DNA from: Selaginella moellendorffii
Lineage: Eukaryota > Plantae > Lycopodiophyta
Direction: 5' to 3'
Length of the DNA stretch: 64,000 nt
NCBI RefSeq assembly: GCF_000143415.4
Contig: NW_003314295.1
Span: 504,125-568,124 of the forward strand
Under the pieces are notes generated by a model. That model ran no database searches. It had not been told where the DNA came from and was given only the letters and a program-made list of their open reading frames with translations. Position 1 is the stretch's first letter, and each line of letters opens with the position of its first letter. Positions 16,109-63,400 of this stretch are shown here, one piece after another. The position numbers and the translations under genes are program-made.

Positions 16109-17155
16109 ATGGCTGTTTCATCCATTGTGAGCATTTTTGCAGCGGAGAAAAGCTATTCCATTCCACCAGTGTGTAAACTCCTTGCCTCTCCAGTGCTGAA
16201 TCCTCTGTACGATGCAAAGGCCGAGTCTCAGATCAATGCGTGGTGCGCCGAGTTTCTGAAGTTGCAACCTGGAAGCGAGAAAGCTGTCTTTGTTCAAGAA
16301 AGCAGGCTTGGATTGCTCCCGGCTTATGGTTACCCCAGCATTCCATACGAGAAGATTGTTCCGGTTGCAAAGTTCTTCGCTTGGTACTTTCATGCAGATG
16401 ACATTCTGGATAGCCCGGAGATCTCCTCGTCGGACATGAGGAATGTGGCAACTGCATACAAGATGGTTTTAAAGGGAAAATTCGACGAGGCCACGCTTCC
16501 AGTGAAAAATCCGGAGCTGCTGAGGCAAATGAAGATGTTATCTGAGGTCTTGGAAGAATTGTCCCTCCATGTAGTGGATGAATCAGGCCGATTCGTGGAT
16601 GCTCTGACCAAGGTGATCGACATGTTTGAGATTGAATCGAGCTGGCTTCGCAAGCAAATCATTCCCAACTTGGATACATACCTCTGGCTGAGAGAGATCA
16701 CATCTGGTGTGGCTCCTTGCTTTGCTCTGATTGATGGTTTGCTGCAACTTAGGCTGGAGGAGCGTGGCGTGCTGGATCATCCTCTCATACGCAAGGTTGA
16801 GGAGATTGGGACGCACCACATTGCGCTCCACAATGACATGATCTCGTTCAGGAAGGAGTGGGCGAAAGGATACTACCTCAACGCCGTGCCCATTCTCGCC
16901 AGCAATTGTAAGTGTGGCTTGAACGAGGCAATTGGCAAGGTTGCGAGCATGGTGGAGGATTTGGAGAAGGATTTCGCCCAGACAAAGCATGAGATCGTTT
17001 CAAGTGGGCTTGCCATGAAGCAAGGAGTCATGGACTATGTGGACGGGATAGAGGTGTGGATGGCCGGAAGCGTAGAATGGGCATGGACGAGCGCTAGATA
17101 CCATGGAATTGGGTGGATCCCTCCTCCAGAAAAATCAGCGACCTTCCAACTCTAG
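16109..17155 (+). CDS. MTPSL: microbial terpene synthase-like protein, copy 1
   Basis: 348 aa, intronless, alpha-domain only; DDILD (DDxxD), effector Arg in WLREITSG, NDMISFRKE (NSE/DTE), WTSARY; TATA-like TATAAAG at ~16061. Confidence 0.93.
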   Translation: MAVSSIVSIFAAEKSYSIPPVCKLLASPVLNPLYDAKAESQINAWCAEFLKLQPGSEKAVFVQESRLGLLPAYGYPSIPYEKIVPVAKFFAWYFHADDILDSPEISSSDMRNVATAYKMVLKGKFDEATLPVKNPELLRQMKMLSEVLEELSLHVVDESGRFVDALTKVIDMFEIESSWLRKQIIPNLDTYLWLREITSGVAPCFALIDGLLQLRLEERGVLDHPLIRKVEEIGTHHIALHNDMISFRKEWAKGYYLNAVPILASNCKCGLNEAIGKVASMVEDLEKDFAQTKHEIVSSGLAMKQGVMDYVDGIEVWMAGSVEWAWTSARYHGIGWIPPPEKSATFQL

Positions 17156-23038: not shown

Positions 23039-24143
23039 ATGGCTCTTCCATCCATTGCGAGGATTTTCGCAGCAGAGAAAAGCTATTCCATTCCACCAGT
23101 GTGTAAACTCCTTGCCTCTCCAGTGTTGAATCCGCTGTACGATGCAAAGGCCGACGCTCAGATCGATGCGTGGTGCGCGGAGTTTCTGAAGTTGCAACCT
23201 GGAAGCGAGAAAGCTGTGTTTGTTCAAGAAAGCAGGCTTGGATTGCTCGCGGCTTATGTTTACCCCAGCATTCCATACGAGAAGATTGTTCCGGTTGCAA
23301 AGTTCTTCGCTTGGTTCTTTCTTGCAGATGACATTCTGGATAGCCCGGAGATCTCCTCGTCAGACATGAGATATGTGGCAACTGCATACAAGATGGTTTT
23401 CAAGGGAAGATTTGACGAGGCCACGCTTCCAGTGAAAAATCCGGAGCTGCTGAGGCAAATGAAGATGTTAGCTGAGGTTTTGGAAGAACTGTCCCTCCAT
23501 ATAGTGGATGAATCAGGCCGATTCGTGGATGCTATGACCAAGGTGCTCGACATGTTTGAGATTGAATCGAGCTGGCTTCGCAAGCAAATCCTTCCCAACC
23601 TGGATACGTACCTCTGGCTGAGAGAGATCACATCTGGTGTGGCTCCTTGCTTTGCTCTGATTGATGGTTTACTGCAACTTAGGCTGGAGGAGCGTGGCGT
23701 GCTGGATCATCCTCTCATACGCAAGGTTGAGGAGATTGGGACGCACCACATTGCGCTCCACAATGACTTGATCTCGTTCAGGAAGGAGTGGGCGAAAGGA
23801 AACTACCTCAACGCCGTGCCCATTCTCGCCAGCAATTGTAAGTGTGGCTTGAACGAGGCAATTGGCAAGGTTGCGAGCATGGTGGAGGATTTGGAGAAGG
23901 ATTTCGCCCAGACAAAGCATGAGATCGTTTCAAGTGGGTTTGCCATGAAGCAAGGAGTCATGGACTATGTGGACGGGATAGAGGTGTGGATGGCCGGAAA
24001 CGTAGAATGGGGATGGACGAGCGCTAGATACCATGGAATTGGGTGGATCCCTCCTGCAGGTAGAATGGGGATGGACGAGCGCTAGATACAATGGAATTGG
24101 ATGGATCCTTCCTCCAGAAAAATCAGCGACCTTCCAACTCTAG
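23039..24143 (+). CDS. MTPSL: microbial terpene synthase-like protein, copy 2 (stop at 24085 unspliced, or 24143 if 24060-24117 is spliced)
   Basis: DDILD, NDLISFRKE and WTSARY are all intact; 58-bp tandem duplication near the 3' end. Confidence 0.9.
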
Positions 24144-24159
24144 ATTGTTGCTCAGTTCT

Positions 24160-25440
24160 ATCAAATAAGCAAATTGAAATGCACAGTAGATGTGGTATCA
24201 ACATCAAACACGCAGCTCAGATCTTCCATGGTATGGCCAAGAGGGACAAGTTCAGCTGGGATCTTTTGCTGGTTGCCTGCTGCAAAAACGGGCACTTTGA
24301 TGAAGCGCACTGTGATGGGCATCTTGATTCTGCCAAGGTAGTCTTTAGCAAAATGCCTGCTCGCAACTTGGTCTCGTGGACGACGATGCTGGGGGTTTTA
24401 TCTCAGCTCGCGGATGTAGAAAGCACTTTTGAAGAGATGATTACGTATGGAAGAGAATCAAAGAGGCAGCTGGCTTCCTCAAGGCGTATAGGCGACGAGC
24501 AGCGTTGTGACGGAGACAAGATCGTGCTGCGGCATCTGATCGTGAAAGAAGCGCTCCGACTCTTTCAGGAGGCCGCAGTGGACGTAGCCGGAAAGAATTG
24601 CCGTGCAAGTCGAGAGATTCCTCACACGCTGGAAGAGCTCCAGAGAAGACTCCAGATGCCAGTGACGGGAGACACGATGTCGTCTCGTGCACTTGCGCAA
24701 TTGCAGCATTGCTGTGTGTGGAACGCCATAGCTACGGGATTAACCCAATGCGTCCTCCTGGACGAAACCATGAAAATCCTCGACAAAATACCGGCATGGA
24801 ATCTTGCGACCTGGAACACGCTGCTAACATCACACTCCTTGCAAGGGAATCTTACCGGGGCTAGAAGAGTCTTTCACGAAATGCCAGACAAGAACTTGGA
24901 GTCGCGGAACGCCATGCTCTCGACATATGCCCAAAACGGGCATATTTCTCTTGCAAGGAAGTGTTCCAAACGATGCCCTTGCGCAGCGTTGAATCCTTCA
25001 GTGCAATGCTGACCGCATATGCCCAAGCCGGCAGCCCCAGCGACGTGTTTGATTCCTTCGAAGAGATGAAGCTAGTGGAGATGCCCGACGATTCCTGCTT
25101 CACTTTGGTGCTGATTGCGAGCAGCCAAGTTGGCGAGCCCAAAGTCGGCGGCTCCTACTTCAGCTCCATGCGTCTGGATTACGGGGTGGCGGCGAGGAAG
25201 CAACACTACTGCTGCATCGTGGACATGCTGGGGCGAGCGGGATACCTGGATGCGGCGGAAGAGCTTGCGCAAACCATGCCTTTTCTTCCCAACTCGTGGG
25301 ACTGGACGTCCATGCTAAGTTCTTCCAGACGCGATAGAATCTGGAAAAACGGTGCTCGAGTGACGAAACGAGCTTTGCTTTCGAGCCGCATGTTCTTGTG
25401 CTGCTCGCAAACTCACGCTCACTACTTTTCCAAAACTCGA
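24160..25440 (+). pseudogene. PLS-PPR pseudogene (block copy 2)
   Basis: Copy of 17190-18689 with lost start, deletions, frameshift near 24960 and an inverted internal segment at ~24441-24672. Confidence 0.85.
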
Positions 25441-32152: not shown

Positions 32153-35100
32153 TGTTGTGAATGTGATTTCGGGTATTGAAAAATACTTGTTAGCTAGTCC
32201 TTATGGGCACTCTTTCCTTACTGCCATGACACCAGGAGGTCGGTACTACTGGTCCCTTTTATGGTCTCCACCCAAGCTAGTTGAGAAACTGATCATCGCG
32301 TGTGCACTTGACCAGATGAGCATAAGGACGGAATTCTTACATGCTATTTGTCAAGCATACTTGACTTAGTTAGAGAAACTCATTTGTTGACTTGCACTTG
32401 TTAGTGTTGGAAACCCCCGCGATATTGAGACTAGTCCCTCAATATTCGCTAAATGATAGATTACCGTGTTTGCCAAACACCCTCGCTATCATGCCCTTTG
32501 TGTTAGTCTCATTTTGGTCCCAAGTGCTATTTATGGAAAGTGTTTAGATTAGCTCATTTGGTATATCTACGGAATGTAGAGATCGGCCTGAACACAATGG
32601 TGTTCGTCCCGTGTCCAAATTCGCAATCTATCACCATTCCATATTTAGTAAGTTTTGGACTTGTCCCAGAGACTAACTTCTGGTACTAAGAGAGGCTGGG
32701 GGNNNNNNNNNNNNNNNNNNNNNNNNNNNNNNNNNNNNNNNNNNNNNNNNNNNNNNNNNNNNNNNNNNNNNNNNNNNNNNNNNNNNNNNNNNNNNNNNNN
32801 NNATGTATAGTAGGGATAGTGGTTGGAATGCATGTCTGACCACCTGAGACATTAGTTTGGCTCCCACTGGGTTGTGTCACTCCTTGTTCTGCATTCGGCT
32901 TGGGTCTAAGCCCAAGCTCCACGCTGTTCTAGTTGGTGGGGTATCTTCCTCTTCGCGTTAGGCCACCGGTATGCCAAAATTGTGTCAGACTCCGTCTGAC
33001 ACCATTTTGCATGTAGGTGCTGGATACGAGGAGATGGTGCTTGTGGGATTGTACTGAACCCTCGCTTCGTAGCGCAACAGGCTTGGAGTTTGGCTCCAAA
33101 TTCAGGTGCACTACATTTGGTATCAGAGGAATTGTCTCAGTGATTCCTATCCAACTTTTGTTAGGTTTTCTGACTCAAGTTGCATATATAGAGACTTTTC
33201 TAGTAGATCAAAAACAACCTGTGTAGGATTAGTTGGATAGCACCATTCGGTAAGAACATTGTAAGCATGTTCAGTTACTGATACAGGCATGCATGCAACT
33301 AGCAAGATGGTGAAGAGGAACCGTGCTGATGACACTGAAATCTCTAGACGGGCGAATTGAGAGGAGGAAACTCCTACTAGAGATGCTGCAAAAGAGGTTG
33401 AGGTTGAGTCAGAAGAGGAAGAGTCAGATGCTACAGCATTGCAGCGTATGAGGCAGCTAAACCAGCTAAGCCTAAGCAACCAGACTCCTCTTCGAGTTTT
33501 GAGGACGATGAAGTTTTGCAGCCGCTCCCTGTTGCACGAGTTTCAAAGTTCAAGCCTCCAAAACCACCCAATTTCAGAGGCATGCGGGACTATCAAGTTT
33601 TGGAAGACTAGGTCTACGATATGGAAAACTATTTCATAGTGGCAAACGTAGATGATTGTATGAAAGTTGCATGCGCGCAATCCTTTCTCACCGATCATGC
33701 CAAAACTTGGTGGCGCCAGGTGTGTGCTGAAAAAGGGCAGACTAGAAGTTGGACCAAGATGCGGTCTCGCATCCATAAGGAATACCTACCGGATGATCTT
33801 GGTCTGAGACTTTGTGCGGAGCTGCGGCGGTTAAAGCAGCGAGGGGATCTCATGCATTACGTTAATGCGTTTGCTCAGAAGCACATTATAATTGCAAATA
33901 TGAGTGACGAAGATGCTCAGAGTTATTTTCTGGAGGGTTTAAGTTCATTTTCTCGCAATGAGATTTTGAAGTTTAAGCCGAAGACGTACCTAGAGTGTAA
34001 GGAGGCAACACAGCAAGTTGCCTTTAGTCACTCGCTCATGGAATAATATCAGCAACCGTATGCTGGTAACTCGGATAAGAATAAGAATTTTAGGAATAAA
34101 CAAGGTGATCGGAAATAGAGGGTGGAAGGTAGGTTCCGCTCTGGAGGCTCACAAGCAACGGTTAACAAAGGTGGTGGTGGTTGGAGACCACCAGCAACTT
34201 CTTCTGGTCCTAGGCCCTCTGTTCTTCCTCCTGGTGGATACAAGCAATAGCAACCTACAAAACTTGCTCCTAGTGGAATGGGTAGTGTGGGTCATTTCTT
34301 CCATTGTGGAGAGTCGGGACATAGGTCCTCGGAATGTCCCAACAAGCATAAGACAAGATCTCGTATTAATGTCATGAGGGAAGATGGTGGAGGTGAAGCT
34401 GAAGGAGTTGACGAGTTGGTCAATGCAGACTATGAGGAAGAAGAGGTGAGTAACTTTCGTTGCTTTCCTCAAGCTTTTCTTGCAGTCAATGCAAACACTA
34501 ATCCGTTGATGTATATGGTAAGCTTTGTCCATGGACACTGAATCTGAGTGATGATTGACATGGGAGCTACGCACAACGTGATATCTGAAGACTTAGTTAA
34601 GTTGTTAGGATTGAATGCTGAGAAAATGTCGCCTATGCACTTCCGGTTTGCAGAAGGTGGGCAAGTAGCCAGAAAGTTTGTGAGTGATGTTCCAATAAAG
34701 ATATCCAAGTGAAAAGAAAGAGTGGACTTGGTAGTGTTGTAAATACCAGATTTTTAGATGGTGTATGGTATGGATTTCTTCAACAAGTATATAAAAGGGA
34801 TTTATGGTGCTGGACAAAGTCGTATCACGTTGAAGTCCGAAGGACGTCTTAATGTGTCCTTCCAGTTGCAAAGGCATTCCTCAAAGGATTGGGATGCTAA
34901 GTTCCTAACTGCGAGGGCCACTCAAAAAATAGCTAAGAGGGGATGTCGGACCTTTTGGGTTCAAGTGATGGAAGCTGAGAGTGTTAGTGACTCAATTCGA
35001 ATCGGTGATGGGGTTGATCTTGTACCACAGAAGATATTGGAGTTGTTGGCGCGGAATCAAGATATTTTCCCGAAGGATTTGCCACCAGAGCTACCTCCTA

Positions 35101-38100
35101 GCCGTGAGGTTGATCATCGAATTGAGGTTATTTCGGGTTCTAAACCACTTACGAAAACTCCGTATCGATTGAACATCAAGGAGATGGCTGAACTCAAGAA
35201 GCAACTCACAGAGCTTCTTGACAAAGGTTATATCCGACCAAGCAAATCACCTTATGGAGCGCTGATCCTTTTTGTTATGAAAAAGGATGGAACCATGAGG
35301 ATGTGTATTGACTATCAGGCATTCAACAAGATCACGGTTAAAAACAGTTATCCTTTGCCTCGCATTGATGACTTGTTTGACCAACTCTTAAAGGCTAAGT
35401 ATTTTACGCAACTTGATTTGCAGTCCAGGTATCATCAGATACGGGTGGCGGATCAAGATGTGGAGAAGACAGCCTTTAAGACTCGGTATGGATCTTATAA
35501 GTTCCTTGTCATGCCATTCGGGTTATGCAATGCTCCGGCAACGTTCAGCACTATGATGGATAGAATATTTGGAGATTATTTAGACACATTTGTTGTCTTA
35601 TATATCGACGATGGTCTACTCTTCAACAAAACGTTGGAAGATCATTTGAAACACTTGGAGCTGGTGTTTCAGAAGTTGCGCAAACACAAACTGTATGCTA
35701 AGGAAAGTAAATGCGCTTTTGAACAATTGCGCGTAAACTTTCTCGGATATATAGTTGGTGGTGGCATAATTGAGGTTGATCCAAAGAAGGTGGAAGCCGT
35801 GAAGTCCTGGGAAGTCCCGACCACTGTATCAGATGTTCGTTCCTTTCTCGGTTTGGCGGGATACTATCGTAAGTTTGTCCGCAATTTTGCAAGAATTGCT
35901 CTTCCGTTGACTGAGTTGACGAAGAGTAGTATTCCGTTTCATTGGACACCGGCTTCTCAGCGTGCTTTTGTACGGTTGAAGGAGATCTTGACTACGGTTC
36001 CTGTTCTTAGGATCCTAGAGCTTGATAAACCATTCGAAGTGCATTGTGATGCATTTGGCTATGCTATTGGTGCCGTGTTGCAGCAAGATTGTGACAAAGC
36101 GGTTGGTGTTACGGTAAGGTGACATGGTTGTCCCGTTGCGTTCTATTCCAAGAAATTGGATGAAACTCAACGAAGATGGCTAACGCATGAAAAAGAGATG
36201 TTTGCTATAGTGTCGACCCTGGAACACTGGAGACACTACTTGGGTGGACACACCAAGGTTTATACAGATAGTAACACACTAAGCTACTTTGCTACGTAGC
36301 CTAAGCTTATGCCGAAGCAGGCTCATTGGCAAGAGAAGCTTGCTAGATATGATATTGAAATTATATATAAACCTAGTAAAGATAATATTGTTTCGGATGC
36401 ATTGAGTCGTGAGGCTCAGTTCCGGGCAATATCAACAATCAGTTCGGACTGGTTAGAGGATGTTCGGGCTTCATATGGAAGTGATCCATTGGTGAAGGCA
36501 ATCTTAAGTCGTGCGGGGTTGTTGAAGCAGAGCCCTGGTAGCAAAGCAGCGAAAGTTGTTAGTCGCACTAATGTGACGCTTCACTTCTCAGTTCAGGATG
36601 GGCTTATATTCTATAAGCAAGAAAGATTGTATCTTCCCTCTAAGGATCTACAGCAGTTGTTTCTGCGAGAACATCATGATGTTCCAACAGTGGGACATGA
36701 TAGAAAGCAAAAGACTCTAGCTTCATTGAAAAAAGGGATTTTTCTAGTCTGATATGGAAGGTGATGTAGCGGATTATGCCCTATATGCCAGCAATGTAAG
36801 CGCAAAACTAAGAAGCAGGCTGGAAAGTTGTAGTGCATTCCAGCACCGGCATGGCCATTTCAGAGTGTGACACTTGATTTCATCACTTGCTTGCCGAAGT
36901 CTAAGGGTTATGATACTTTGATGGTGGTTGTGGATCGGTTGTCAAAGATTGCACACTTCATTCCAACTGTAGGAATAGTAAATGCGAAACAAGCAGCAAA
37001 GCTCTTTTTCCATGAAGTAGTGCGGGTTCGTGGTCTCCCTAAAGAGATGATCTCGGATAGAGATTCGAGATTTATGGGGAAGTTTTGGGGCACACTGTTC
37101 CAATTATTCAATACCAAGTTGAAGTTTAGTATGGTTTATCATCCTCAGACTGATGGGCAGACCAAACGTGTGAATGCTCAAGTTAAGGATTATCTGCGGT
37201 ACTATGTCGCGGCAGACCAACGTGACTGGGTTGAGCATTTGGACACAGCAGAAATCTGTTATAACAACACATTTCACAGCGCTATTGGCTATTCTCCATG
37301 GGAGATGCTGCAAGGGAATGCTCGTGGGGTCCCTCAACAGATTGTTGTACCGAAACCAATGTCCGAAGTGTTGGTCCTAGCTGTTGAGACTTATGTGGAG
37401 TAGCTACGCCACAATTAGTCTAGAGCTACTGAGGCGATAGGCAAAACTCAGGATAGGTATCGACGTGATAAGGATTAGCATCGTCGGGATGTATCTTATC
37501 AAGTGGGAGATCAGGTGTGGCTATCTTCCCGGAACTTGAATATTAAGGGTTCTTTGTCTCGGAAGCTCTTGCCGAGATATGTTGGACCCTATCGGGTGCT
37601 AAAACGCATTAGTGATGTATCATATTGGTTGGATCTACCTGCGGAGATGTCCAATGTTCATAATGTATTTCATGCCAATTTATTGGCTCCTTACACTATG
37701 GATGTTGAGTGTCACGTGGAAATTCGTCCACCGCCAGAAGTTGTGGATGGTGAACCTAAATACGAAGTTGAAAGCATTCTGTCATGTCGCCGGAAACGTG
37801 GTGGTCGTGCGAAGGAATATCTAGTTAAGTGGAAAGGTTACCCGCCTTGTGAATCAACTTGGGAACCTCTTAGTAATCTTACCCATGCTCGTGAGCTTGT
37901 CACGGAGTATGAGAATAGTAATAAAAACTAATTTTTGTAAAAATCTTGTAATAAATCTTGCAAATCAATAAAGTAATATATTTCTATCAATCAAAGTGTC
38001 GTTTCTCTTGTTCGTTCATACTTGGGTCAGTTTTGGCAGGTTGACTTCGGCATTTCGGTGCATGGGTCCAATCCATAACCATGGGGATAACTATTATAGA

Positions 38101-41790: not shown

Positions 41791-42837
41791 ATGGCTGTTT
41801 CATCCATTGCGAGCATTTTCGCAGCAGAGAAAAGCTATTCCATTCCACCAGTGTGTCAACTCCTTGTCTCTCCAGTGCTGAATCCTCTGTACGATGCAAA
41901 GGCCGAGTCTCAGATCGATGCGTGGTGCGCGGAGTTTCTGAAGTTGCAACCTGGAAGCGAGAAAGCTGTGTTTGTTCAAGAAAGCAGGCTTGGATTGCTC
42001 GCGGCTTATGTTTACCCGACCATTCCATACGAGAAGATTGTTCCGGTTGGAAAGTTCTTCGCTTCGTTCTTTCTTGCAGATGACATTCTGGATAGCCCGG
42101 AGATCTCCTCGTCGGACATGAGGAATGTGGCAATCGCATACAAGATGGTTTTAAAGGGAAGATATGACGAGGCCACGCTTCCAGTGAAAAATCCGGAGCT
42201 GCTGAGGCAAATGAAGATGTTATCTGAGGTCTTGGAAGAATTGTCCCTCCATGTAGTGGATGAATCAGGCCGATTCGTGGATGCTATGACCAGGGTGCTC
42301 GACATGTTTGAGATTGAATCGAGCTGGCTTCGCAAGCAAATCATTCCCAACCTGGATACGTACCTCTGGCTGAGAGAGATCACATCTGGTGTGGCTCCTT
42401 GCTTTGCTCTGATTGATGGTTTACTGCAACTTAGGCTGGAGGAGCGTGGCGTGCTGGATCATCCTCTCATACGCAAGGTTGAGGAGATTGGGACGCACCA
42501 CATTGCGCTCCACAATGACTTGATGTCGCTAAGGAAGGAGTGGGCGAGTGGAAACTACCTCAACGCCGTGCCCATTCTCGCCAGCAATCGTAAGTGTGGC
42601 TTGAACGAGGCAATCGGCAAGGTTGCGAGCATGGTGGAGGATTTGGAGAAGGATTTCGCCCAGACAAAGCATGAGATCATTTCAAGTGGGCTTGCCATGA
42701 AGCAAGGAGTCATGGACTATGTGAACGGCATAGAGGTGTGGATGGCCGGAAACGTAGAATGGGGATGGACGACCGCTAGATACCATGGAATTGGGTGGAT
42801 CCCTCCTCCAGAAAAATCAGGGACCTTCCAACTCTAG
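41791..42837 (+). CDS. MTPSL: microbial terpene synthase-like protein, copy 3
   Basis: 348 aa intact; DDILD, NDLMSLRKE, WTTARY; upstream TATATAAG. Confidence 0.93.
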   Translation: MAVSSIASIFAAEKSYSIPPVCQLLVSPVLNPLYDAKAESQIDAWCAEFLKLQPGSEKAVFVQESRLGLLAAYVYPTIPYEKIVPVGKFFASFFLADDILDSPEISSSDMRNVAIAYKMVLKGRYDEATLPVKNPELLRQMKMLSEVLEELSLHVVDESGRFVDAMTRVLDMFEIESSWLRKQIIPNLDTYLWLREITSGVAPCFALIDGLLQLRLEERGVLDHPLIRKVEEIGTHHIALHNDLMSLRKEWASGNYLNAVPILASNRKCGLNEAIGKVASMVEDLEKDFAQTKHEIISSGLAMKQGVMDYVNGIEVWMAGNVEWGWTTARYHGIGWIPPPEKSGTFQL

Positions 42838-53401: not shown

Positions 53402-53495
53402 CGGCACGTGGTACAACTCCTCCTGTTCTTGGTGCCAATCCTCGCGTTCGGCACGTGGTACAACTCCTCCTGTTCTTGGTGCCAATCCTCGTGTT
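53402..53495 (+). repeat. 47-bp tandem duplication frameshifting gag
   Basis: CGGCACGTGGTACAACTCCTCCTGTTCTTGGTGCCAATCCTCG[C/T]GTT twice. Confidence 0.9.
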
Positions 53496-56452
53496 CGGCC
53501 GGAGTTCTTTCGCAGGAATCCTGGGGATGATGTGTACCATTGGTTCGATCACTTCACAGTGATTGCCACATATCATTCTTGGGATGATGCTCAACGTTTG
53601 CGTGAGTTTCCCACGTGTCTCCAAGGGATGGCGTTGCAGTGGTACAATGGTTTGAGCGCAGCCACTCGTGGGGATTGGAGTGTTCTCCCGAACGTCTTCA
53701 AACGCGCCTTCAGACATGCCGATAATTATGATGATGCTTTCCAACAATTGCATTGTCTTCACCAAGGGCCATCTGAGTTGGTGATGCAATTTGGCATTCG
53801 TTTCCGAAGTCTTTTGCTTCGTGTGGAGCCAAATATGTCGGAGCGGATCAAGCTAGGAATGTTGTGGCCAGCACTTCGTCAAGATCTTGTCAGACTTGTG
53901 CATGCACTTGCTCCTGCCACCCTTGACGATGCTCTTCGCTTGGCACAACGTTATGAGACGTCGCCTCTTCCACTTCTCGCTACACGTCCTTCCGCTCCAC
54001 TTCCTATGGGTGATGGTCCTGTTCCAATGGAGGTTGATGCTGCTGCTGCTCGAGTCCAAGGACAAGCGTGAGGACGTGGTCGTGGCCGTGATGTTCGCGG
54101 CTGGGCGTGTGATGAAGTTTGTCATACTTATCGGCGTTGTCGTCGTTTTCCGGATTGGCGACCTCCATTTCCTGGGTGGAGACCTTGGCATCAGCAACAT
54201 CCCGTGTGTGCTATTGCAGTGGAAGGTCTGGACACCAAGATGCCTCCAGGAAACGAGGAGTCGCGCGAGTAACGGAGGGACCTTGCGCGAATAAATCAGT
54301 GACCCCTCCATCTTTCTTTCGGGAGTATCATCAAGGGGTTCACTCGGCACCGGTTCATCCAGTGTTTACTTTCCAAGCTCGTTTTTATAACAAGAGGTCT
54401 CCTATTATTCTCTCCGTGTTGGTTGATACAGGTTCGAGTTTGTTGCCACACGTTGTCGTCTACACTTGTGTCGTGCGGCGGAACCAGTTTTCATTTTTTA
54501 TGGCAACGGCCGTACACATGCATGTGCACGGGATGAGGTGGACCTGGTTGTGCATGTGGGCAATCTCGAGCTTGAGTTGCAGTCGTTGCGGGTGGTGCCG
54601 AGTCAAGCTTTTGACCTCATTCTTGGTATGGATTGGTTGCAGCGCAATCATGCCAAGTGTGACTTTGAGGCTTCTCCCCCTTGTCTCATACTTCCTTATG
54701 TTTCATCCATTCCTCTCACTTCCATACCTCTTCGTCCCTCTACTTCTACCTTTGCTTCCATTACTTTTGTTCCCCCACTCTTTCCTTCTGTGTTTCCATC
54801 TTGTTTTGCTTTTCCCTTTTCCGATCCCTCCGACGATCTTTGTGTTGCAGTAGTTGACCGGCTCATGAAGGAGTATTCTGATCTCTTTGAATTTGACCTA
54901 TCGTATGGGGCCAAGATTGCCACACGTCATCCGATTCCAACTGGGGATGCTAGTCCAATCAAGGTTCCTGTTCGTCGTCGGTCACCTAAGGAGATCAAGA
55001 TTTTACGAGCGAATGTCAAGGAAATGCTAGAGAAGGGTGTTATTTGGAAGTCATGGAGTCCTTGGGCATGTGAACCTCATCTTGTGACAAAGCCTAATGG
55101 GAGTATTCGTTTTTACATCGACTATCGTCCGTTAAATGAAGTGACGATCCCAGATGTGTATCCTCTTCCTCACACTGCTGATCTCTTGGATTGTCTGGGG
55201 CGAAGTCGTTGGTTCACCAAGCTAGATCTTGCTTCTGGGTATTGGCAAGTACCGATAGCCAAAGAAGATATTTCTAAGACTGCTTTTCATACACCATTTG
55301 GTTTGTACGAATTCTTGGTGATGCCTTTTGGTTTGAACAATGCTCCAGCAACTTTCTGTCAAGACCCCCAACAAGATCAAGACTAGAAAATGCTAAAGAC
55401 AAAGAGAAAAGCTAGTGGAAACAAAGAAGAGGCCTTAGATTGGTGTTGATTCAGATTGTGGAGAAATGGAACAAGGCTAACCTATATATACTATAGGTTG
55501 ATGAAGCTCCACCACTCTTGGATTGAGGACGGCCTAAATATAGCTGAGGTCGAGGAGGCGCCACATCATCATCAAGAATATGGCTCGAGACTCAAGAATC
55601 GGGAAGTGTCTCGAGAGTCAGGAATAGGGAAGTGTCTCAAGAGTCAGGAATAGGGAAGTGTCTCGAGAGTCAGGAATGTGGTCTGCAGGTCAGGAATCCG
55701 GCGCGAGTCAGGAATGTGGCAAGAATTGGGGGATTCCTGACAGCACCCCCTCCTCAAGAACGAGTGGAACGAGGATGTGAACGAGAACGAAGAGGAGGAT
55801 GAGATGAGCGGCGAGGAATGGGAGATGGAGAAAAAGAATGAGGACTGGGACGAGAAGGATAGCGGCGGTGGAAGTCCTGAACAAGGTCAGGAGAATGAAT
55901 CAGGTTGTCCGCAGGTTCCCAAGTGCGTTCCTCAGGTCCGTAAACCTTCCAGTCAACCAGATAGTAGAGTTTAGACCGTGAAATCTTGGAATCAAGGATG
56001 TCCTGAACCTCGTACTCAGACCCATCCTCGAGCTGCACTGGTGGAGGTGGAGGAATGACCCGATTTGGAATAGGACTGGGAATATAAGGCTCAAGGAGAG
56101 AGGAGTGAAAAATGGGGTGAATTTGATATGAGGAGGGAAGTGCAAGGCGATAAGTGACGGGATTAATGATGGTAGTGATAGGAAAAGGACCGAGGCGTTT
56201 GAAATCGAGTTTTGGACAGGGCCTGGTGGTGGAGATATTTCGCCTGAGGAGCCAGACTTTATCCCCAATATTGTAAGGGGGACAATCTTGACGATGGATA
56301 TTGGCAAATGTTTTGTGAGATTCCTGAGCACGATGGAGGTGGAAGGAGATGGAGTTGTGGATTTCTTGAAGGTTGGAGATAAATGCCTCAGAGCGGGGAT
56401 TTGAACGAGAGGATTCAGATGGAGAAGGAAGTGAGAGATTGAATTGGGGATT

Positions 56453-59400
56453 TCAGCCAGAGTTCGCAAAGAAGGGGGAAACTCGAAGAGAGGAGTGAAC
56501 AGAGTTGTTATAGGAGAACTCAGCAAGGGGAAGGATATCGAACCAGTTATCCTGATGATAGTTGATGAAGCACCTCAAGAATTGTTCCAGCGTCTGAATC
56601 GTTCGCTCGGACTGTCTATCAGTTTGAGGATGATATGCCGAAGAGAGGTTGGCCTTCACTCCAAGCAGCTGCAAAAACCGTTGCCAGAAATGAGAGATGA
56701 ACTGAGGCCCCCGATCCGAAACCACATCTATAGGAATCCCATGAAGTCGGAAAATTTCCCTGAATACCAGTTTTGCCATGTCCTCGCCCGAAAATTCCTT
56801 GGTACACGGCAAGAAGTGCGCCATCTTTGTGAAGCGATCCACCACAACTAAAATACTGTTGAAGCCTCCAGAACTCGGAAGATCACTCAAGAAATCCATG
56901 GAGATGGATTCCCAAGGACCTAAAGGGACCGGGAGGGAACGAAGCAAACCTGAAGGAAGGTGGCGAGGTACCTTATTCCGAGCACAAGTGTCACAGGAGG
57001 TAACAAAAGCTTTGATGTAGTCATCCATGTGAGGCCACCAAAAGTCCCGTCCAACTAGCTCATATGTTTTCACAATGCCGAAATGACCAGCAGTCGGGCT
57101 ATCGTGGCACGCCATCAGGACCAACCTTCGAGCATTACCTTCAGGAACGTAAAGCTGCTCCCCACGGTACAATAAGCCATCTAAGAACTCGAACTCGTCA
57201 AATCGTCGGCAATCGGGAGTCACTGGGTGTCCAGCCTGAAGATGGGTGAAAATATTGCTGGCGAGGTCATCAGATTGGAGATCGTTTCTGATTGCATCCA
57301 TCAAGGAGGAGTCCTGAGGGGCCAGGGAAATTGCCATAACTTGAAGCCGATCAGGACCGAGGATAACTTGATCCTGTTGATCGAAGGCAGGATTACCAGG
57401 CCTGAGACTGAGATAGGAGCGCCTTGAAAGAGCATTAGGAAGGCCTTGAAGCTTTCCAGGTCTGTACTTGATAACAAAGTCAAACTGACTCAGGAATTGT
57501 GCCCACCTTGCTTGATGACGGCTCAAAACTCGGGAAGTGGCAAAGTACTCGAGATTTTTATGATCCGTCCAGACTGTTGTTTGATGGCCCGCCCCCTCCA
57601 AGAAACGGCGCCACTCTCCAAAGGAATCCACGATGGCAAGGAGCTCCTTGTCGTGGATTTCGTAATTGATCTCCGCATGCTGGAATTTCCGAGAATGGAA
57701 AGCGACCGGATGAAGTTCAAGATCCGCTCCGAGTTGAGACAGCACAGCACCAATGGCAAAGTCGGAGGCGTCAGCCTCGATGAAGAAAGGTTGTGAGGAA
57801 TCAGCATGGATCAACACGGGAGCAGAACTGAATGCTGCCTTGAGTGTGTCGAAGGCGTGCTGGGCAGCAGTAGACCAAGAGAAGGGAACATACTTGCGAG
57901 TGAGATGCGTGAGAGGAAGGACAATGTCAGAGTAGTGATCAATGAATTTGCGGTAGAAGTTGGCGAAGCCAAGGAAAACCTGAACGTCCGACATTGATTG
58001 TGGAGGCTCCCACTCGAGAATAGTCTTGACTTTGGCAGGATCCATCGTGATACCTTCAGGAGTGACAATGTACCCAAGGAACTCCACAGACTGCTGATCG
58101 AAGGAACATTTCTCAAGCTTCGTGTATAGGCCGTGTTCTCGCAGCTTCGCCAGCACCTTACGTACATGTTCGTCGTGCTCCTCCTGAGTTCTTGAGTAGA
58201 TGAGGATGTCATCGAGGTAGACGATCACCATCTGATCAAGAAACTCCCGAAAGACGTCGTTCGCCATGTGTTGGAAAACTACGGGAGCATTTGTCAAGCC
58301 AAATGGCATGACAGTGTACTCGAAGTGGCCATAGCGGGTTCGGAATGCAGTCTTCCATTCATCACCAGGCCGGATCTGGATCAGGTTGTATGCGCCACGG
58401 AGGTCAATCTTGGTGAAGAAGCGGGCACCGCCGAGGCGTTCCAATAGGTCCGAGATCAGGGGCAGCGGATAACGGTTCCGAACAGTCACCTTGTTCAAAC
58501 CTCGGTAATCGATGACTAGCCGCAAACTCCCATCCTTCTTTTTGACAAAGAAGACAGGCGTGCCAGCCGGGGACTGCGAATGTTGAATGAACCCTGAGGC
58601 AAGGTTCTCATCCACGTACTCTTTGAGGGCCTTAAGCTCGGACGGGGATAACCCGTAGATAGGCCCCCACGGAGGCGACGCTCCTTCCTGTAAATCAATG
58701 GGACAGTCATAAGGCCAATGAGCAGGCAGTACACTAGCTTTTTTCTTGTCAAACACATCCCCAAAATCATGATACTTCTCAGGAAGACTAACAGGAAAAA
58801 CATGCAAAGCAAAAAGGAAAATAGATTCTTCATGAAGGAGTTCTTTCATAGTGATTGTGGAGATAGGAGGAGGTGTACGACTAAATGGAATGATGAGACG
58901 AGGATACTGTCCAGTGTAAGATGGAAGAGAGGAAAAAGAAGAGGATGAAAACTTCGTAGAGTCAAGAACAGAACCCCGACTTGAGTTTAGGGAACTTTTC
59001 CTGATTCGGACTTGATGAACACCAGGGGAAGCCGTGGGAGATGGTGATGTGGGAGAGATGAGCTGTAAGTCCTTCCAACAAATCTGAGGCTGATGTAGTT
59101 GGAACCAAGGAAGACCGAGCACCACAGAGGAGGACTTGCTGTTGATGATGTTGAAGGCGATATCGGTGACGGTGGACCCGATGTGTACTCGAACGGGCAA
59201 CGTTTCCCTAAGTCCAGAAGATGGAGACACAAAATGCCCGCCGATGCCTTCAACCCTCAGATCCCGTATGGTAGGAGAAAGAGGAACGTGATGTCGGGCA
59301 GCAAAGTCCGTGTCCATGAAGCAGGAAGTTGCACCCGAGTCCAGTAGCGCCAAAGCCTTGAGTCCTGATTGTCCGGTGAAAGAAAGGAGACATGGGACGC

Positions 59401-59527
59401 GGAAGTTGCGGGAATTGGTGGTGGCTTTGATGAAAGGTGGTGAGGAGCTTGATAAGGAAGAAAAGTGATTTTTATTTGGGGAGTCCAAACAGACAGCTCC
59501 TACTCTGTTTGGACAGGGTCGTTTCCC
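56453..59527 (-). CDS. pol of nested chromovirus (-1 frame; premature TGA at 56453 before the GPY/F and chromodomain region)
   Basis: PR-RT-RH-IN motifs in order in the 1046-aa ORF. Confidence 0.85.
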   Translation of the reverse strand, partial: GKRPCPNRVGAVCLDSPNKNHFSSLSSSSPPFIKATTNSRNFRVPCLLSFTGQSGLKALALLDSGATSCFMDTDFAARHHVPLSPTIRDLRVEGIGGHFVSPSSGLRETLPVRVHIGSTVTDIAFNIINSKSSSVVLGLPWFQLHQPQICWKDLQLISPTSPSPTASPGVHQVRIRKSSLNSSRGSVLDSTKFSSSSFSSLPSYTGQYPRLIIPFSRTPPPISTITMKELLHEESIFLFALHVFPVSLPEKYHDFGDVFDKKKASVLPAHWPYDCPIDLQEGASPPWGPIYGLSPSELKALKEYVDENLASGFIQHSQSPAGTPVFFVKKKDGSLRLVIDYRGLNKVTVRNRYPLPLISDLLERLGGARFFTKIDLRGAYNLIQIRPGDEWKTAFRTRYGHFEYTVMPFGLTNAPVVFQHMANDVFREFLDQMVIVYLDDILIYSRTQEEHDEHVRKVLAKLREHGLYTKLEKCSFDQQSVEFLGYIVTPEGITMDPAKVKTILEWEPPQSMSDVQVFLGFANFYRKFIDHYSDIVLPLTHLTRKYVPFSWSTAAQHAFDTLKAAFSSAPVLIHADSSQPFFIEADASDFAIGAVLSQLGADLELHPVAFHSRKFQHAEINYEIHDKELLAIVDSFGEWRRFLEGAGHQTTVWTDHKNLEYFATSRVLSRHQARWAQFLSQFDFVIKYRPGKLQGLPNALSRRSYLSLRPGNPAFDQQDQVILGPDRLQVMAISLAPQDSSLMDAIRNDLQSDDLASNIFTHLQAGHPVTPDCRRFDEFEFLDGLLYRGEQLYVPEGNARRLVLMACHDSPTAGHFGIVKTYELVGRDFWWPHMDDYIKAFVTSCDTCARNKVPRHLPSGLLRSLPVPLGPWESISMDFLSDLPSSGGFNSILVVVDRFTKMAHFLPCTKEFSGEDMAKLVFREIFRLHGIPIDVVSDRGPQFISHFWQRFLQLLGVKANLSSAYHPQTDRQSERTIQTLEQFLRCFINYHQDNWFDILPLAEFSYNNSVHSSLRVSPFFANSG

Positions 59528-60471
59528 GACTGCAACAGAGGTGGACTTTGAGGCAGAGTGAACTCGACCAATCGGGGAGGCTTCCTGGGACACACAGCTG
59601 CTTTGTGATTAGGATCAGCACAGTAGAGGCAAAGATTATGAGATATTCGACGTTGCCTCTCAGCAGGACTCAACTTCCCTCTAATGAGTCGGGGAGTACC
59701 AGAAATATCCATTGGGACCGGAGTAGTAGGTTCAGGACTATGCCCCGAAGACTCAAGCTGGGATTCCTGAGTCTGGGACAGAAAAACAGCGGCGCGGCGA
59801 CTTTCCTGACGACGTTCAAAGAGACGATTGTCACATCGAACAGCTTTGTTGATGGCGTCCGACAGATCCTTGGGATCCTCCATAGTGAGCAACAAATCCT
59901 TGACACCGTTGTTGAGGCCGAAACGAAATTGGTCAATCAGGGCCTGCTCATCCCACTGAGTGTCCAAGGCAAGGAGTTGGAACTCTGCAGCGTAGATTGA
60001 GGCAGGACGAGACCCCTGAGAGAGACGTCTCATCTTTGTGGTAGCAGCCCGAACCCGATCCGTCTCGCCAAAACATGCTTCGAGCTTCTCTTTGAACAAT
60101 TGAAGATCCATCAGCTCCGGAACCACGACCCCTTTCATGCTCTTCTCCAGAAGAGGAGAAAACCATGACAAAGCTGCACCCTCAAGCAACGTCCCAATCG
60201 CGCCGATTTGAGACTCGGGAGTGGGGTACCGCCGATGTTGAAGTGCAAAGATCAGCTCCATTTGGTTCAAAAATCCACGAAGCTCCGAACGCTTGCCTGA
60301 AAATTTCGCCGGGAAACTCACCTTCGGTTCAGGAACTTTGTTGGATCCTTGAGCCGAAAGTGAAGCAAGCTCCTGCTGCATGCGAAGAAGGGTCGCCTTC
60401 AGCTCGGTATTCTCAGACTGGATTTTTGCAAGGACTTCGGCAAAGAAATCAGGATGGCTTGGAGACTCCAT
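59500..60471 (-). CDS. gag of nested chromovirus
   Basis: PEPKVSFPAKFSG.., CLYCADPNHKAAVC; ATG at 60471. Confidence 0.85.
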   Translation of the reverse strand: MESPSHPDFFAEVLAKIQSENTELKATLLRMQQELASLSAQGSNKVPEPKVSFPAKFSGKRSELRGFLNQMELIFALQHRRYPTPESQIGAIGTLLEGAALSWFSPLLEKSMKGVVVPELMDLQLFKEKLEACFGETDRVRAATTKMRRLSQGSRPASIYAAEFQLLALDTQWDEQALIDQFRFGLNNGVKDLLLTMEDPKDLSDAINKAVRCDNRLFERRQESRRAAVFLSQTQESQLESSGHSPEPTTPVPMDISGTPRLIRGKLSPAERQRRISHNLCLYCADPNHKAAVCPRKPPRLVEFTLPQSPPLLQSGNDPVQTE

Positions 60472-63400
60472 TGGCAAGAAGAAAGAAAAGAAAGGGGGAA
60501 AAAGACAAAAGCAATCAAATAATCAAAACGAGCTAAAAGAAAAGCAAAAAGCACAATCTGAATCAAACTGTCAAGACCCCCAAGAAGATCAAGACTAGAA
60601 AATGCTAAAGACAAAGAGAAAAACTAGTGGAAACAAAGAAGAGGCCTTAGACTAGTGTTGATTCAGATTGTGGAGAAATGGAACAAGGCTAACCTATATA
60701 TACTATAGGTTGATGAAGCTCCACCACTCTTGGATCGAGGACGGCCTAAATATAGCTGAGGTCAAGGAGGCGCCACATCATCATCAGGAATATGGCTCGA
60801 GACTCAAGAATCGGGAAGTGTCTCGAGAGTCAGGAATAGGGAAGTGTCTCGAGAGTTAGGAATAGGGAAGTGTCTCGAGAGTCAAGAATGTGGTCTGCAG
60901 GTCAGGAATCCGGCGAGAGTCAGGAATGTGGCAAGAATTGGGGGATTCCTGACACTTTCCAGCGGATGATGGACGAGGTTCTTTGCGATATGCCGAAGGT
61001 GACTGCTGACTTCATTGATAATGTCTTGATCCACTCAAAGGGGACGTGGGAGGAGCACATTCGTGATGTTTGTAAAGTGTTGGATCGGCTACGCAACGTT
61101 GGTTTAAAGCTGAAGCAGTCAAAGTGCGTGTTTGGGTCCAAGGACACAACTTATCTTGGGTACCGTATTTCTCGTGAGGGTTTGCAAGTTGATCCTGACA
61201 AACTTATGGCTGTTCTAAAGTTCCTTACTCCGAAGTGTGTGAATGATGTGCAGCGCTTCTTGGGTAAGGTGCAGTATCTCGGTCGTTTTGTGGATCATCT
61301 TTCCGATTGCACTACACCATTGCGAGCATTGCTGAAGTCATCAACGTCATCTTTCATCTGGTCTCCGGATTGTGAGCGGGCGTTTGTGGATCTCAAAGAG
61401 CTATTGACGACTCCTTTGGTTTTGGCATATCCTGACTACACTCGACCTTTTATTTTGCGCATGGATGCTTCTGACATTGGTCTTGGAGGTGTGTTGATGC
61501 AAGAGAGCTCGAGTGTGCCTAGTTAGTGCCATTCCATTGCATACATAAGCCGTACATTACAACTAGCGGAGATGAACTACTCCACGACAGAGAAGGAGTG
61601 TTTAGTAGCAGTCTGGGGTTTTGAGAAACTTCATACATATCTACATGGTTCTCGGATGTTATTTGAAGGTGACCATGCTGCTGTTACTTCATTATTGAAA
61701 CGGAAGAACCTGGTTGGTCGTACGGCTCGATGGGCTTTGAAGCTTCAGATATATGATTTCGATGTTGTTCATCGCCCAGGGAGTTCTATGGCTAATGCTG
61801 ATGCCCTTTCTCGAGCTCCTCTTCCTTCTCCACTCACTTCTCATGTTTCTGACGAACCTGTTGTTCCAGCATCTGTGGATTTTCTAGATGAGGATTCTGT
61901 GCTGTCGGTGGTTGCTGTCCTTGATGTTCAGTGTCCACAAGACGCAGAGCAAGATCTACCTTCTCTTAATGAGGTTCGCGAGGCTAAAAATATTGAGCCG
62001 TGGATTTGAAGGCTTCGAGATGGGTTTGAGAATCCTGCCTCACTTGCTGATGACTTGCCTTTCCGGCATTTACATTCTCAATATTGCTTTGAAGATGGCC
62101 TTCTTTATTTTGTGGGGACGGATCTTGATGATCATTTACGGCTGGTGGTGCCTTCGGTGTTTATTCCGCGGTTTCTCCATGCCTACCATGATTCTCCTGT
62201 TCTAGGTGGGCATATAGGACACCGTCGTGTCACCGAGAAGCTACACAGGTCTTTCTATTGGCCGGAGATGCGACGTGATATTATCCGGTATGTGCATAAC
62301 TGTGTTTGGTGCCAAGCTCGTAATACTCCCCTTCGTGCTGCGGAAGGACGGTTGGAGTCAATTGTGGTTTCCCATCCGTTTGAGTTAGTGGCGTTTGATC
62401 TTATGGGACCTTTTCCACGGTCGACTGCTAGCAATGAGTATGTTATTATTGCTTCTGACTACTTGATTCGTTGGGTGGAAGTTGGTGCTTTTGCTAGCGC
62501 TTCTGCAACTGCTGTTGGCTACTTCCTCCTCAATCGAGTGGTGTTCCAGCATTCTTGTCCAGAGCGGATTCTTTCGGATAATGGTCCCGCATTTATGGCT
62601 GAGGCATTTCATGTTTTGACGTCTCGGTTGGGGATACGCCACACTTTCACGAGTGCTTATCATCCACAATCAGACGGTTTGGTGGAACGGCTCGTCCGGA
62701 CATTCAAAGGGATGATTGCGAAGTATGTGAACTTTCAGCATTCGGATTGGGATGGTTACTTGCCGTCTCTTTGGTATGCATATGTTACAGGGGTGCAGAG
62801 TTCTGTTGGTGCTTCACCATAAAAACTCCTATATGGTCATGATTCAATATTACCAATGGAGTTGGGTTTACCTTCGCGATTGCCATGAGCTACCGATGCT
62901 AGATCATGGGATCAGTATTTGACGAGCATTCTTCCACTTGTCCGAGCAGAGTCTGCTGAACACTTAGGCCGCGTACAAGTGGGACAACAACGGTGCTACA
63001 ACTCCCATCATCGTCCACCTACGGAGTACAAAGTGGATGATTTGGTGTTAGTTCATTTTCCCCATCTTACGGTATGTGGTTTATCTAAGGGGCTTCTTGC
63101 GCAATAGAAAGGACCGTATCGGGTGTTGCGGCAAGTTGGACCACAAGTTTATGAGGTTCGGTATGACGTTCAACAGGCCGATCCTCCAGAGATTGTGCAT
63201 GTGCAGCGGTTGAAACGCTTCGTACAAAGGGATCAGGAGGAGTTTATACCACCTACAGATCCACCAATGCCTCCTCCTGACGTTCCTCCGGATCCCGGCC
63301 CATCTTCAAGAGAACCTTGATGGCCTTCCATTATCCCGAGAGGAGGGGATGATGTGAGGGCCAAGTGTACGGTTACGATGCCGTATACTAATATTAGCGT

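What the first reader, a model, noticed from the sequence alone, without database searches (positions are those of the whole stretch)
24002..24143. Candidate newborn intron created by a 58-bp tandem duplication in MTPSL copy 2
Seen: 24002-24059 is repeated at 24060-24117. The junction creates CAG|GTAGAA, and the second unit ends TCCTTCCTCCAG|A. Removing 24060-24117 restores WIPP[A]EKSATFQL* (stop 24141-43) and 348 aa, matching the paralogs; unspliced it gives PAGRMGMDER*. 58 nt fits other introns here (48-62 nt). The putative intronic unit has 3 substitutions versus 1 in the exonic unit. Intron gain by tandem duplication is a proposed but rarely captured mechanism, and here the intronless sister copies lie alongside.
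Basis: partly seen in the sequence, partly recalled or inferred. Interest (0 to 1): 0.8.

Follow-up and report, generated by a model that had tools for sequence, protein, structure and literature searches.

The report
58-bp duplication, untested candidate intron
One of three neighbouring terpene-synthase genes of the clubmoss Selaginella moellendorffii carries a real 58-base tandem duplication at its very end that looks like a possible brand-new intron, but nothing yet shows that it is spliced, and the gene reads through it with only its last nine amino acids changed.

Summary
Window 24002-24059 is repeated at 24060-24117 (54/58 identical), inside an intronless microbial-type terpene synthase (MTPSL) gene of Selaginella moellendorffii, scaffold GL377599.1. 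None of seven close relatives has the duplication. These are the two copies in the window and five on other scaffolds, including the collinear counterpart on GL377583.1, probably the other haplotype.

The junction makes CAG|GTAGAA and unit 2 ends TCCTTCCTCCAG. Removing either unit restores the ancestral frame and stop.

The intron reading is untested and somewhat disfavoured:
- The unspliced ORF is also exactly 348 aa. Only the last 9 residues change, beyond the conserved RY motif.
- That unspliced ORF is the public gene model, and no spliced model exists in the protein collection.
- Unit 2 is exon-like in composition (T 22%, G 33%; seven real local introns have T 27-44%).
- The same 58 nt is kept as exon in the cloned SmMTPSL15 cDNA.

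- All four unit differences fall in unit 2 (4:0, not 3:1).
- The proposed diagnostic junction differs by one base from the duplication-free counterpart's native sequence.

Verdict: a real, well-polarised duplication and a testable candidate for the known AGGT tandem-duplication route of intron gain. I put splicing at an appreciable level at about 0.2-0.25.

The parts
23039..24085 (+). MTPSL copy 2, unspliced ORF as publicly annotated (348 aa, tail ...WIPPAGRMGMDER*)
   Evidence: ORF list. Pfam PF19086 Terpene_syn_C_2, E 2.8e-32. The exact protein is in NCBI/UniRef and the gene is called as 1047 nt without an intron on GL377599.1.
24002..24059 (+). Duplication unit 1. Identical to the single-copy sequence of the nearest relatives. 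It encodes VEWGWTSARYHGIGWIPPA, including the RY motif.
24060..24117 (+). Duplication unit 2, the candidate 58-nt intron (CAG|GTAGAA...TCCTTCCTCCAG|A). It carries all four differences: 24089 A, 24101 A, 24108 T, 24114 C.
   Evidence: Composition T 22%, G 33%, GC 50%. Pyrimidine run of 10 before the AG.
24083..24085 (+). TAG stop used if the duplication is read through
24118..24143 (+). Ancestral C-terminal coding piece ((E)KSATFQL*) with the ancestral stop at 24141-24143. It is reached in frame only if 58 nt are removed.
   Evidence: alignment with paralogues.
16109..17155 (+). MTPSL copy 1 (SmMTPSL15 type), intronless, no duplication
   Evidence: The primers in Table S3 of PMC7826640 match its two ends.
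41791..42837 (+). MTPSL copy 3 (counterpart of SmMTPSL17, the (+)-germacrene D synthase on GL377583.1), intronless, no duplication

Best explanation
A 58-bp stretch at the 3' end of an intronless Selaginella moellendorffii MTPSL (class I, alpha-domain-only terpene synthase) gene was duplicated in tandem on one chromosome copy only.

Read through, the duplication shifts the frame after Ala-340. It replaces the last residues (EKS(A/G)TFQL) by GRMGMDER and stops at 24083-24085. By coincidence the product is again 348 aa. The catalytic motifs (DDILD, NDLISFRKE, RY) are untouched. The most likely product is therefore this unspliced mRNA and a functional or nearly functional enzyme with a new tail.

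Unit 2 has since drifted as unconstrained sequence: three GC-to-AT changes, plus one site that may come from a short gene-conversion patch of copy-1 type.

The duplication happens to create a good donor context (CAG|GTA) upstream of a good acceptor (a 10-nt pyrimidine run followed by AG), 58 nt apart. It is thus a latent intron of the Rogers type and may be spliced in a fraction of transcripts.

Shown: the duplication, its polarity, its absence from relatives, both reading outcomes, and the signal quality. Inferred: that the bulk of the mRNA is unspliced.
For: - The duplication and its four differences.
- Absent from 7 relatives, including the collinear counterpart on GL377583.1, which has the same neighbours (PPR, PPR, DFP) and dS 0.023.
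- The unspliced ORF is 348 aa and is the annotated gene.
- No spliced product and no fragment in the protein collection.
- Homology to solved terpene synthases and to a fungal homologue ends at the RY motif (residues 330-331), and the fungal protein ends there, so the changed tail lies outside the conserved core.
- Unit 2 is exon-like in composition. It has T 22%, G 33%, GC 50%. Seven real introns of the neighbouring PPCS gene have T 27-44%, G 12-31% and pooled GC 40%.
- The SmMTPSL15 cDNA (copy-1 type) was cloned end to end as 348 aa, so the single 58-nt GT...AG segment behaves as exon there: PMC7826640.
- dN/dS of copy 2 against its counterpart is 0.56, similar to the other pairs (0.45-0.48), which gives no sign of decay.
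Against: - Donor (six contiguous U1-matching bases, CAGGUA), acceptor and length are fully comparable with real local introns.
- Equally good AG|GTA...YAG intervals of 45-70 nt are rare in exons: 4 in 17.9 kb of long ORFs, only one with a similar pyrimidine tract.
- The subfamily's C-terminal tail is conserved even in an 83%-identical paralogue. Losing it may matter, which would favour splicing.
- Gene models are predictions. The locus is weakly expressed (FPKM about 2 in one tissue), so a missing spliced model is weak evidence.
Confidence: 0.6

Rival explanations
1. Newborn spliceosomal intron. Unit 2 (24060-24117), or alternatively unit 1, is removed from an appreciable share (10% or more) of copy-2 transcripts. 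This restores the ancestral protein ...WIPPAEKSATFQL. It would be a young, allele-specific instance of intron gain by tandem duplication.
For: - GT...AG bounds exactly one unit and its removal restores the frame.
- The new junction supplies CAG| to a pre-existing GTAGAA, and the acceptor has a 10-nt pyrimidine run.
- 58 nt lies within the size range of real local introns (49-107 nt, five of seven at 49-55 nt). The species' intron-length distribution is described as fungus-like and sharply different from that of other land plants (PMC6157073).
- Real local donors are loose (GTTTTA, GTTTTT, GTACTT), so GTAGAA is not disqualifying.
- Comparable pseudo-introns are rare in local exons.
- An engineered AGGT duplication was spliced at 6-16% in human cells (PMC3265369).
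- The conserved tail suggests a benefit from restoring it.
Against: - There is no transcript evidence of any kind.
- The public model is unspliced.
- T-poor, G-rich composition lies outside the range of the seven local introns.
- The same internal sequence and acceptor stay unspliced in the SmMTPSL15 cDNA (PMC7826640).
- The unspliced product is intact, so nothing enforces splicing.
- No alternative-splicing event at scaffold_34 528183/528242 appears in the held part of the supplement of PMC5310277. That text is truncated.
Confidence: 0.23
2. Copy 2 is a silent or decaying gene. The duplication is a first disabling lesion in a redundant tandem family, and neither mRNA form matters.
For: - The family is large and redundant, with copies alongside.
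- Expression of the whole locus is very low.
- The conserved tail is lost.
- Other family members on the sister scaffold are visibly broken or mis-modelled (P0003, P0004, stop loss in P0012).
Against: - The ORF is otherwise intact over 340 codons and all catalytic motifs are present.
- dN/dS of 0.56 is no higher than for the sister pairs, although only 15 substitutions are involved.
- Only three private substitutions occur in 963 nt upstream.
Confidence: 0.13
3. Assembly or sequencing artefact: the duplication is not in the plant's DNA.
For: It is present on one scaffold only, and raw reads could not be examined here.
Against: The two units differ at 4 of 58 positions, and three of those states are found nowhere else among eight sequences. 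A collapsed or stuttered assembly would give identical units or paralogue-derived states.
Confidence: 0.03

Closest known systems
[quoted passage not shown] Examples: vertebrate ATP2A1 with its experimental re-enactment (Hellsten et al. [quoted passage not shown]
   Same: A short exonic segment is duplicated in tandem. AG|GT lies at the repeat junction. The candidate intron is exactly one repeat unit long, and its removal leaves the ancestral peptide unchanged.
   Different: - Splicing has not been shown here.
- No AGGT pre-existed inside the segment. The segment itself starts with GT and ends with AG, so the AGGT is made by the junction.
- The duplication lies in the last 27 codons, so read-through costs only nine residues.
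- The ancestral, unduplicated allele is still present in the same assembly.
Potato RdRp intron gain by tandem duplication (Ma, Lan & Niu 2016, PMC4974935)
   Same: A plant case in which a young duplication is polarised by close relatives.
   Different: In potato the duplicated piece spanned an existing intron-exon boundary. Branch site, pyrimidine tract and intron-like composition were therefore inherited, and splicing was demonstrated. Here the piece is purely exonic, exon-like in composition and untested.
SmMTPSL15 and SmMTPSL17 ((+)-germacrene D synthase), microbial-type terpene synthases of S. moellendorffii (Li et al. 2012; PMC7826640)
   Same: 90-91% identical 348-aa proteins in the same tandem cluster. 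They share the DDxxD, NSE/DTE and RY motifs and are intronless.
   Different: They lack the 58-bp duplication and keep the tail PPEKS(A/G)TFQL.

Membership tests
Intron created by tandem duplication (Rogers model) | Tandem duplication of a segment that is exonic in the ancestral gene | tested here: met
   TRF period 58, 2.0 copies, 93% matches. The single-copy state is coding in 7 relatives.
Intron created by tandem duplication (Rogers model) | GT and AG supplied by the repeat, one unit apart, with AG|GT at the junction | tested here: met
   CAG|GTAGAA at 24057-24065 and CCAG|A at 24114-24118.
Intron created by tandem duplication (Rogers model) | Removal of one unit restores the ancestral reading frame and peptide | tested here: met
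   The exon pieces translated by reference give ...WIPPA and KSATFQL*, with the split codon G|AA = E. This matches relatives ending PAEKSGTFQL.
Intron created by tandem duplication (Rogers model) | The segment is actually spliced out of mRNA | not testable with these tools
   No transcript data could be reached. No spliced protein or fragment is in the protein collection. No event at these coordinates appears in the held part of the PMC5310277 supplement.
Intron created by tandem duplication (Rogers model) | Intron-like auxiliary signals (U-rich composition, branch site, pyrimidine tract) | tested here: inconclusive
   The pyrimidine tract is good (run of 10) and the donor context is good. T is 22% and G 33%, against 27-44% and 12-31% in seven local introns. 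No yUnAy motif is present, but several real local introns also lack one.
MTPSL / microbial-type class I terpene synthase | Alpha-domain-only protein matching Terpene_syn_C_2 | tested here: met
   PF19086, E 2.8e-32, residues 88-288 of 348. The best solved relatives are microbial sesquiterpene synthases.
MTPSL / microbial-type class I terpene synthase | Metal-binding DDxxD and NSE/DTE motifs and the C-terminal RY pair | tested here: met
   DDILD at 97-101, NDLISFRKE at 242-250 and RY at 330-331 are invariant in the alignment. All lie upstream of the frameshift.
MTPSL / microbial-type class I terpene synthase | Terpene synthase activity | not tested
   Activity is reported for the paralogues SmMTPSL15 (PMC7826640) and SmMTPSL17 (UniProt name seen), not for copy 2.

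The most novel reading that the evidence does not exclude
The 58-nt unit is a spliceosomal intron caught at birth. It was created in one step by an exonic tandem duplication in a genome with very short introns. It is still heterozygous against its intronless allele in the sequenced plant, and it is already accumulating changes (three GC-to-AT, one lengthening the pyrimidine tract) that make it more intron-like.
Probability: 0.2. Interest if true: 0.75.

Novelty: new member of a known kind. Interest (0 to 1): 0.42.

Why it matters
Intron gain by tandem duplication is an accepted model with very few natural examples. The literature read here lists ATP2A1, two fission-yeast genes and potato RdRp (PMC4974935, PMC3265369). 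In all of these the ancestral allele is gone.

This case has four useful properties:
- The duplicated and unduplicated forms coexist in one assembly.
- Intronless paralogues sit alongside as controls.
- The host genome has very short introns.
- Read-through is nearly harmless, which is the condition under which an inefficiently spliced newborn intron could persist.

One RT-PCR or a re-mapping of public RNA-seq would decide it. If the unit is not spliced, the case is an ordinary small duplication that rewrites the last nine residues of a redundant enzyme.

Tried and rejected
- Inferring local introns from gene ranges and product lengths alone, by exhaustive GT..AG threading. This gave dozens of equally valid solutions and was dropped. 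It shows that GT...AG at the right spacing alone is worthless: about 106 such intervals occur per 1-kb MTPSL ORF.
- Exact threading of database proteins onto the window. These failed, once because the wrong file was used and then by timing out. They were replaced by a spliced BLOSUM alignment of P0015, which gave seven introns.
- A branch-site motif (yUnAy) as a criterion. Real local introns often lack it in the proper place, so it does not discriminate.
- Dating the duplication from unit divergence. Four changes in 58 nt is more than expected from the divergence of adjacent sequence (Poisson P about 0.008-0.07). However, copy 2 is a mosaic of paralogue types, so gene conversion makes any clock unreliable. 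I draw no conclusion.
- Searching for a donor paralogue carrying the unit-2 variants. None was found in the window or in 8 loci.
- Searching for transcript-derived proteins or fragments, and for an alternative-splicing record in PMC5310277. Nothing was found.
- Li et al. 2012 (PMC3437839) is not held.
- The spliced (joined) protein was deliberately not built, searched or looked up. The exons were examined separately by reference.

Full report
**1. What is there**

The window comes from Selaginella moellendorffii scaffold GL377599.1, with window base 1 at about record base 504125. It holds three intronless genes for microbial-type terpene synthases (MTPSL; Pfam PF19086, E about 1e-31). They lie at 16109-17155, 23039-24085/24143 and 41791-42837 and are 90-92% identical.

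Each gene sits in a repeated block of PPR gene, MTPSL, PPR fragment and phosphopantothenate-cysteine ligase gene. By the primers in Table S3 of PMC7826640, copy 1 is of the SmMTPSL15 type. Copy 3 pairs with SmMTPSL17, the (+)-germacrene D synthase on GL377583.1.

**2.

Tandem Repeats Finder gives 24002-24117, period 58, two copies, 93% matches, no indels, score 204. No other gene in the window has such a repeat.

The boundaries are exact. The bases flanking the array do not extend the repeat, so the duplicated segment begins with GT and ends with AG, and the junction reads CAG|GTAGAA.

Read by pieces, 23999-24058 gives NVEWGWTSARYHGIGWIPPA and 24120-24143 gives KSATFQL*. The split codon G|AA would be Glu.

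Read through, the frame gives GRMGMDER*.

**3.

- The unspliced ORF is itself exactly 348 aa. This very protein is what NCBI and UniRef hold, and the gene is called as a 1047-nt intronless unit.
- The 90%-identity cluster has nine members, and none is the spliced form.
- A search with the last 110 residues found no fragments either.
- GL377583.1 carries the same three gene types in the same order and orientation, with the same neighbours. dS to copies 1, 2 and 3 is 0.036, 0.023 and 0.020.
- The assembly is described as two haplotypes of about 106 Mb (PMC7801247). This is most simply the other haplotype, though spacing differs and a recent segmental duplicate is not excluded.
- The counterpart of copy 2 has no duplication. 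Neither do four further relatives.

**4. Polarity of the differences**

The nearest relatives (P0010, P0012, P0013) read CCTCCTGCAG|AAAAATCAGGG. The G at 24056 is therefore ancestral for this lineage, and unit 1 equals the ancestral sequence.

All four differences lie in unit 2. Three are private GC-to-AT changes (24089 A, 24101 A, 24108 T). The fourth (24114 C) matches the copy-1 type, as does the nearby 24127 C.

Copy 2 is visibly a mosaic of the two paralogue types, with type-1 states at 23776-23927. A short conversion patch is therefore a reasonable source for these two sites (inference).

Private changes are 17-fold denser in unit 2 than in the upstream coding sequence: 3 in 58 against 3 in 963, Fisher P = 0.003. 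This shows relaxed constraint. It is predicted equally by an intron and by out-of-frame or 3' untranslated sequence, so it does not discriminate.

**5. Would it be spliced?**

I obtained seven real introns from the neighbouring ligase gene by spliced alignment to the S. moellendorffii protein P0015.

| Feature | Seven local introns | Candidate (unit 2) |
|---|---|---|
| Length | 55, 107, 52, 49, 52, 68, 69 nt | 58 nt |
| Donor | GTTTTA, GTACTT, GTAAGC x2, GTAAGA x2, GTTTTT | CAG\|GTAGAA |
| Pyrimidines in the 12 nt before YAG | 3-10 | 9 (run of 10 before the AG) |
| T content | 27-44% | 22% |
| G content | 12-31% | 33% |
| GC content | 40% pooled | 50% |

On length, donor and acceptor the candidate is as good as the real introns. 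Equally good AG|GTA...YAG intervals are rare in local exons: 4 in 17.9 kb, only one with a comparable pyrimidine tract. On composition it is plainly exon-like.

There is also a natural control. The same 58 nt, with the same GTAGAA and acceptor but a different upstream context (AGC| or AAC|), is retained in the full-length 348-aa SmMTPSL15 cDNA cloned from leaf RNA (PMC7826640).

For scale, an engineered AGGT duplication in human cells was spliced at only 6-16% (PMC3265369).

**6. Does the gene need splicing?**

Alignments to solved microbial terpene synthases and to a fungal homologue end at the RY pair (residues 330-331), and the fungal protein ends there. All catalytic motifs precede the frameshift. 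dN/dS against the counterpart is 0.56, like the sister pairs.

On the other side, the tail PPEKSGTFQL is conserved even in an 83%-identical paralogue, so it may have some role.

**7. Transcript evidence**

None could be reached. In PMC5310277, scaffold_34 is this scaffold, because gene 417303 maps there. The locus spanning copies 2 and 3 is listed as tissue-specific, with FPKM 2.17, 0 and 0.03. I did not verify which column is which tissue.

No event at 528183/528242 appears in the held part of the supplement, which is truncated.

**8. Verdict**

The duplication is real, cleanly polarised and allele- or scaffold-specific. It makes a bona fide candidate for the known tandem-duplication route of intron gain.

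The evidence available favours mostly unspliced read-through with a rewritten nine-residue tail (confidence about 0.6). Appreciable splicing gets about 0.23, a silent decaying copy about 0.13 and an artefact about 0.03.

The case is cheap to settle and would be a valuable natural example if splicing is found. As it stands it is a candidate, not a captured event.

Noticed in passing
window 24101-25012 (+): The unit-2 substitution G>A at 24101 creates an ATG. That ATG opens a 303-aa ORF running in frame into the downstream PPR ORF, whose annotated start is at 24233. The PPR ORF begins only 90 nt after the MTPSL ancestral stop. This is probably coincidence, but it means the MTPSL 3' end and the PPR fragment are tightly packed or co-transcribed.
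   Followed up: partly
window 23776-23927 within copy 2: Copy 2 carries copy-1-type states at five diagnostic sites within an otherwise copy-2-type gene. It does so again at 24114 and 24127. This is a mosaic pattern, suggesting ongoing gene conversion among the tandem MTPSL paralogues.
   Followed up: partly
window 55356-60867; ORF 56453-59593 (-): Direct repeats of at least 300 bp, 97% identical and 5.2 kb apart, each carry a 26-bp x 3.6 tandem array. They flank a 1046-aa ORF with protease, reverse transcriptase, RNase H and integrase domains. This looks like an apparently intact LTR retrotransposon with the Ty3/Gypsy domain order.
   Followed up: partly
window 53402-53499: A second young tandem duplication (47-bp unit, 2.1 copies, 98% identical), just upstream of the retrotransposon region. 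It was not examined.
   Followed up: no
L003:3001-4059 (GL377583.1, reversed): The paralogue P0012 has lost its stop codon through a small deletion at the 3' end (...CAACTC|AGTTCT...). It runs on for four more codons (SSIK), giving 352 aa. This is another example of C-terminal remodelling in this family.
   Followed up: no
window 34758-36122 (+): A 454-aa ORF with reverse transcriptase and a partial RNase H domain. It is a truncated retroelement lying between MTPSL blocks 2 and 3.
   Followed up: no
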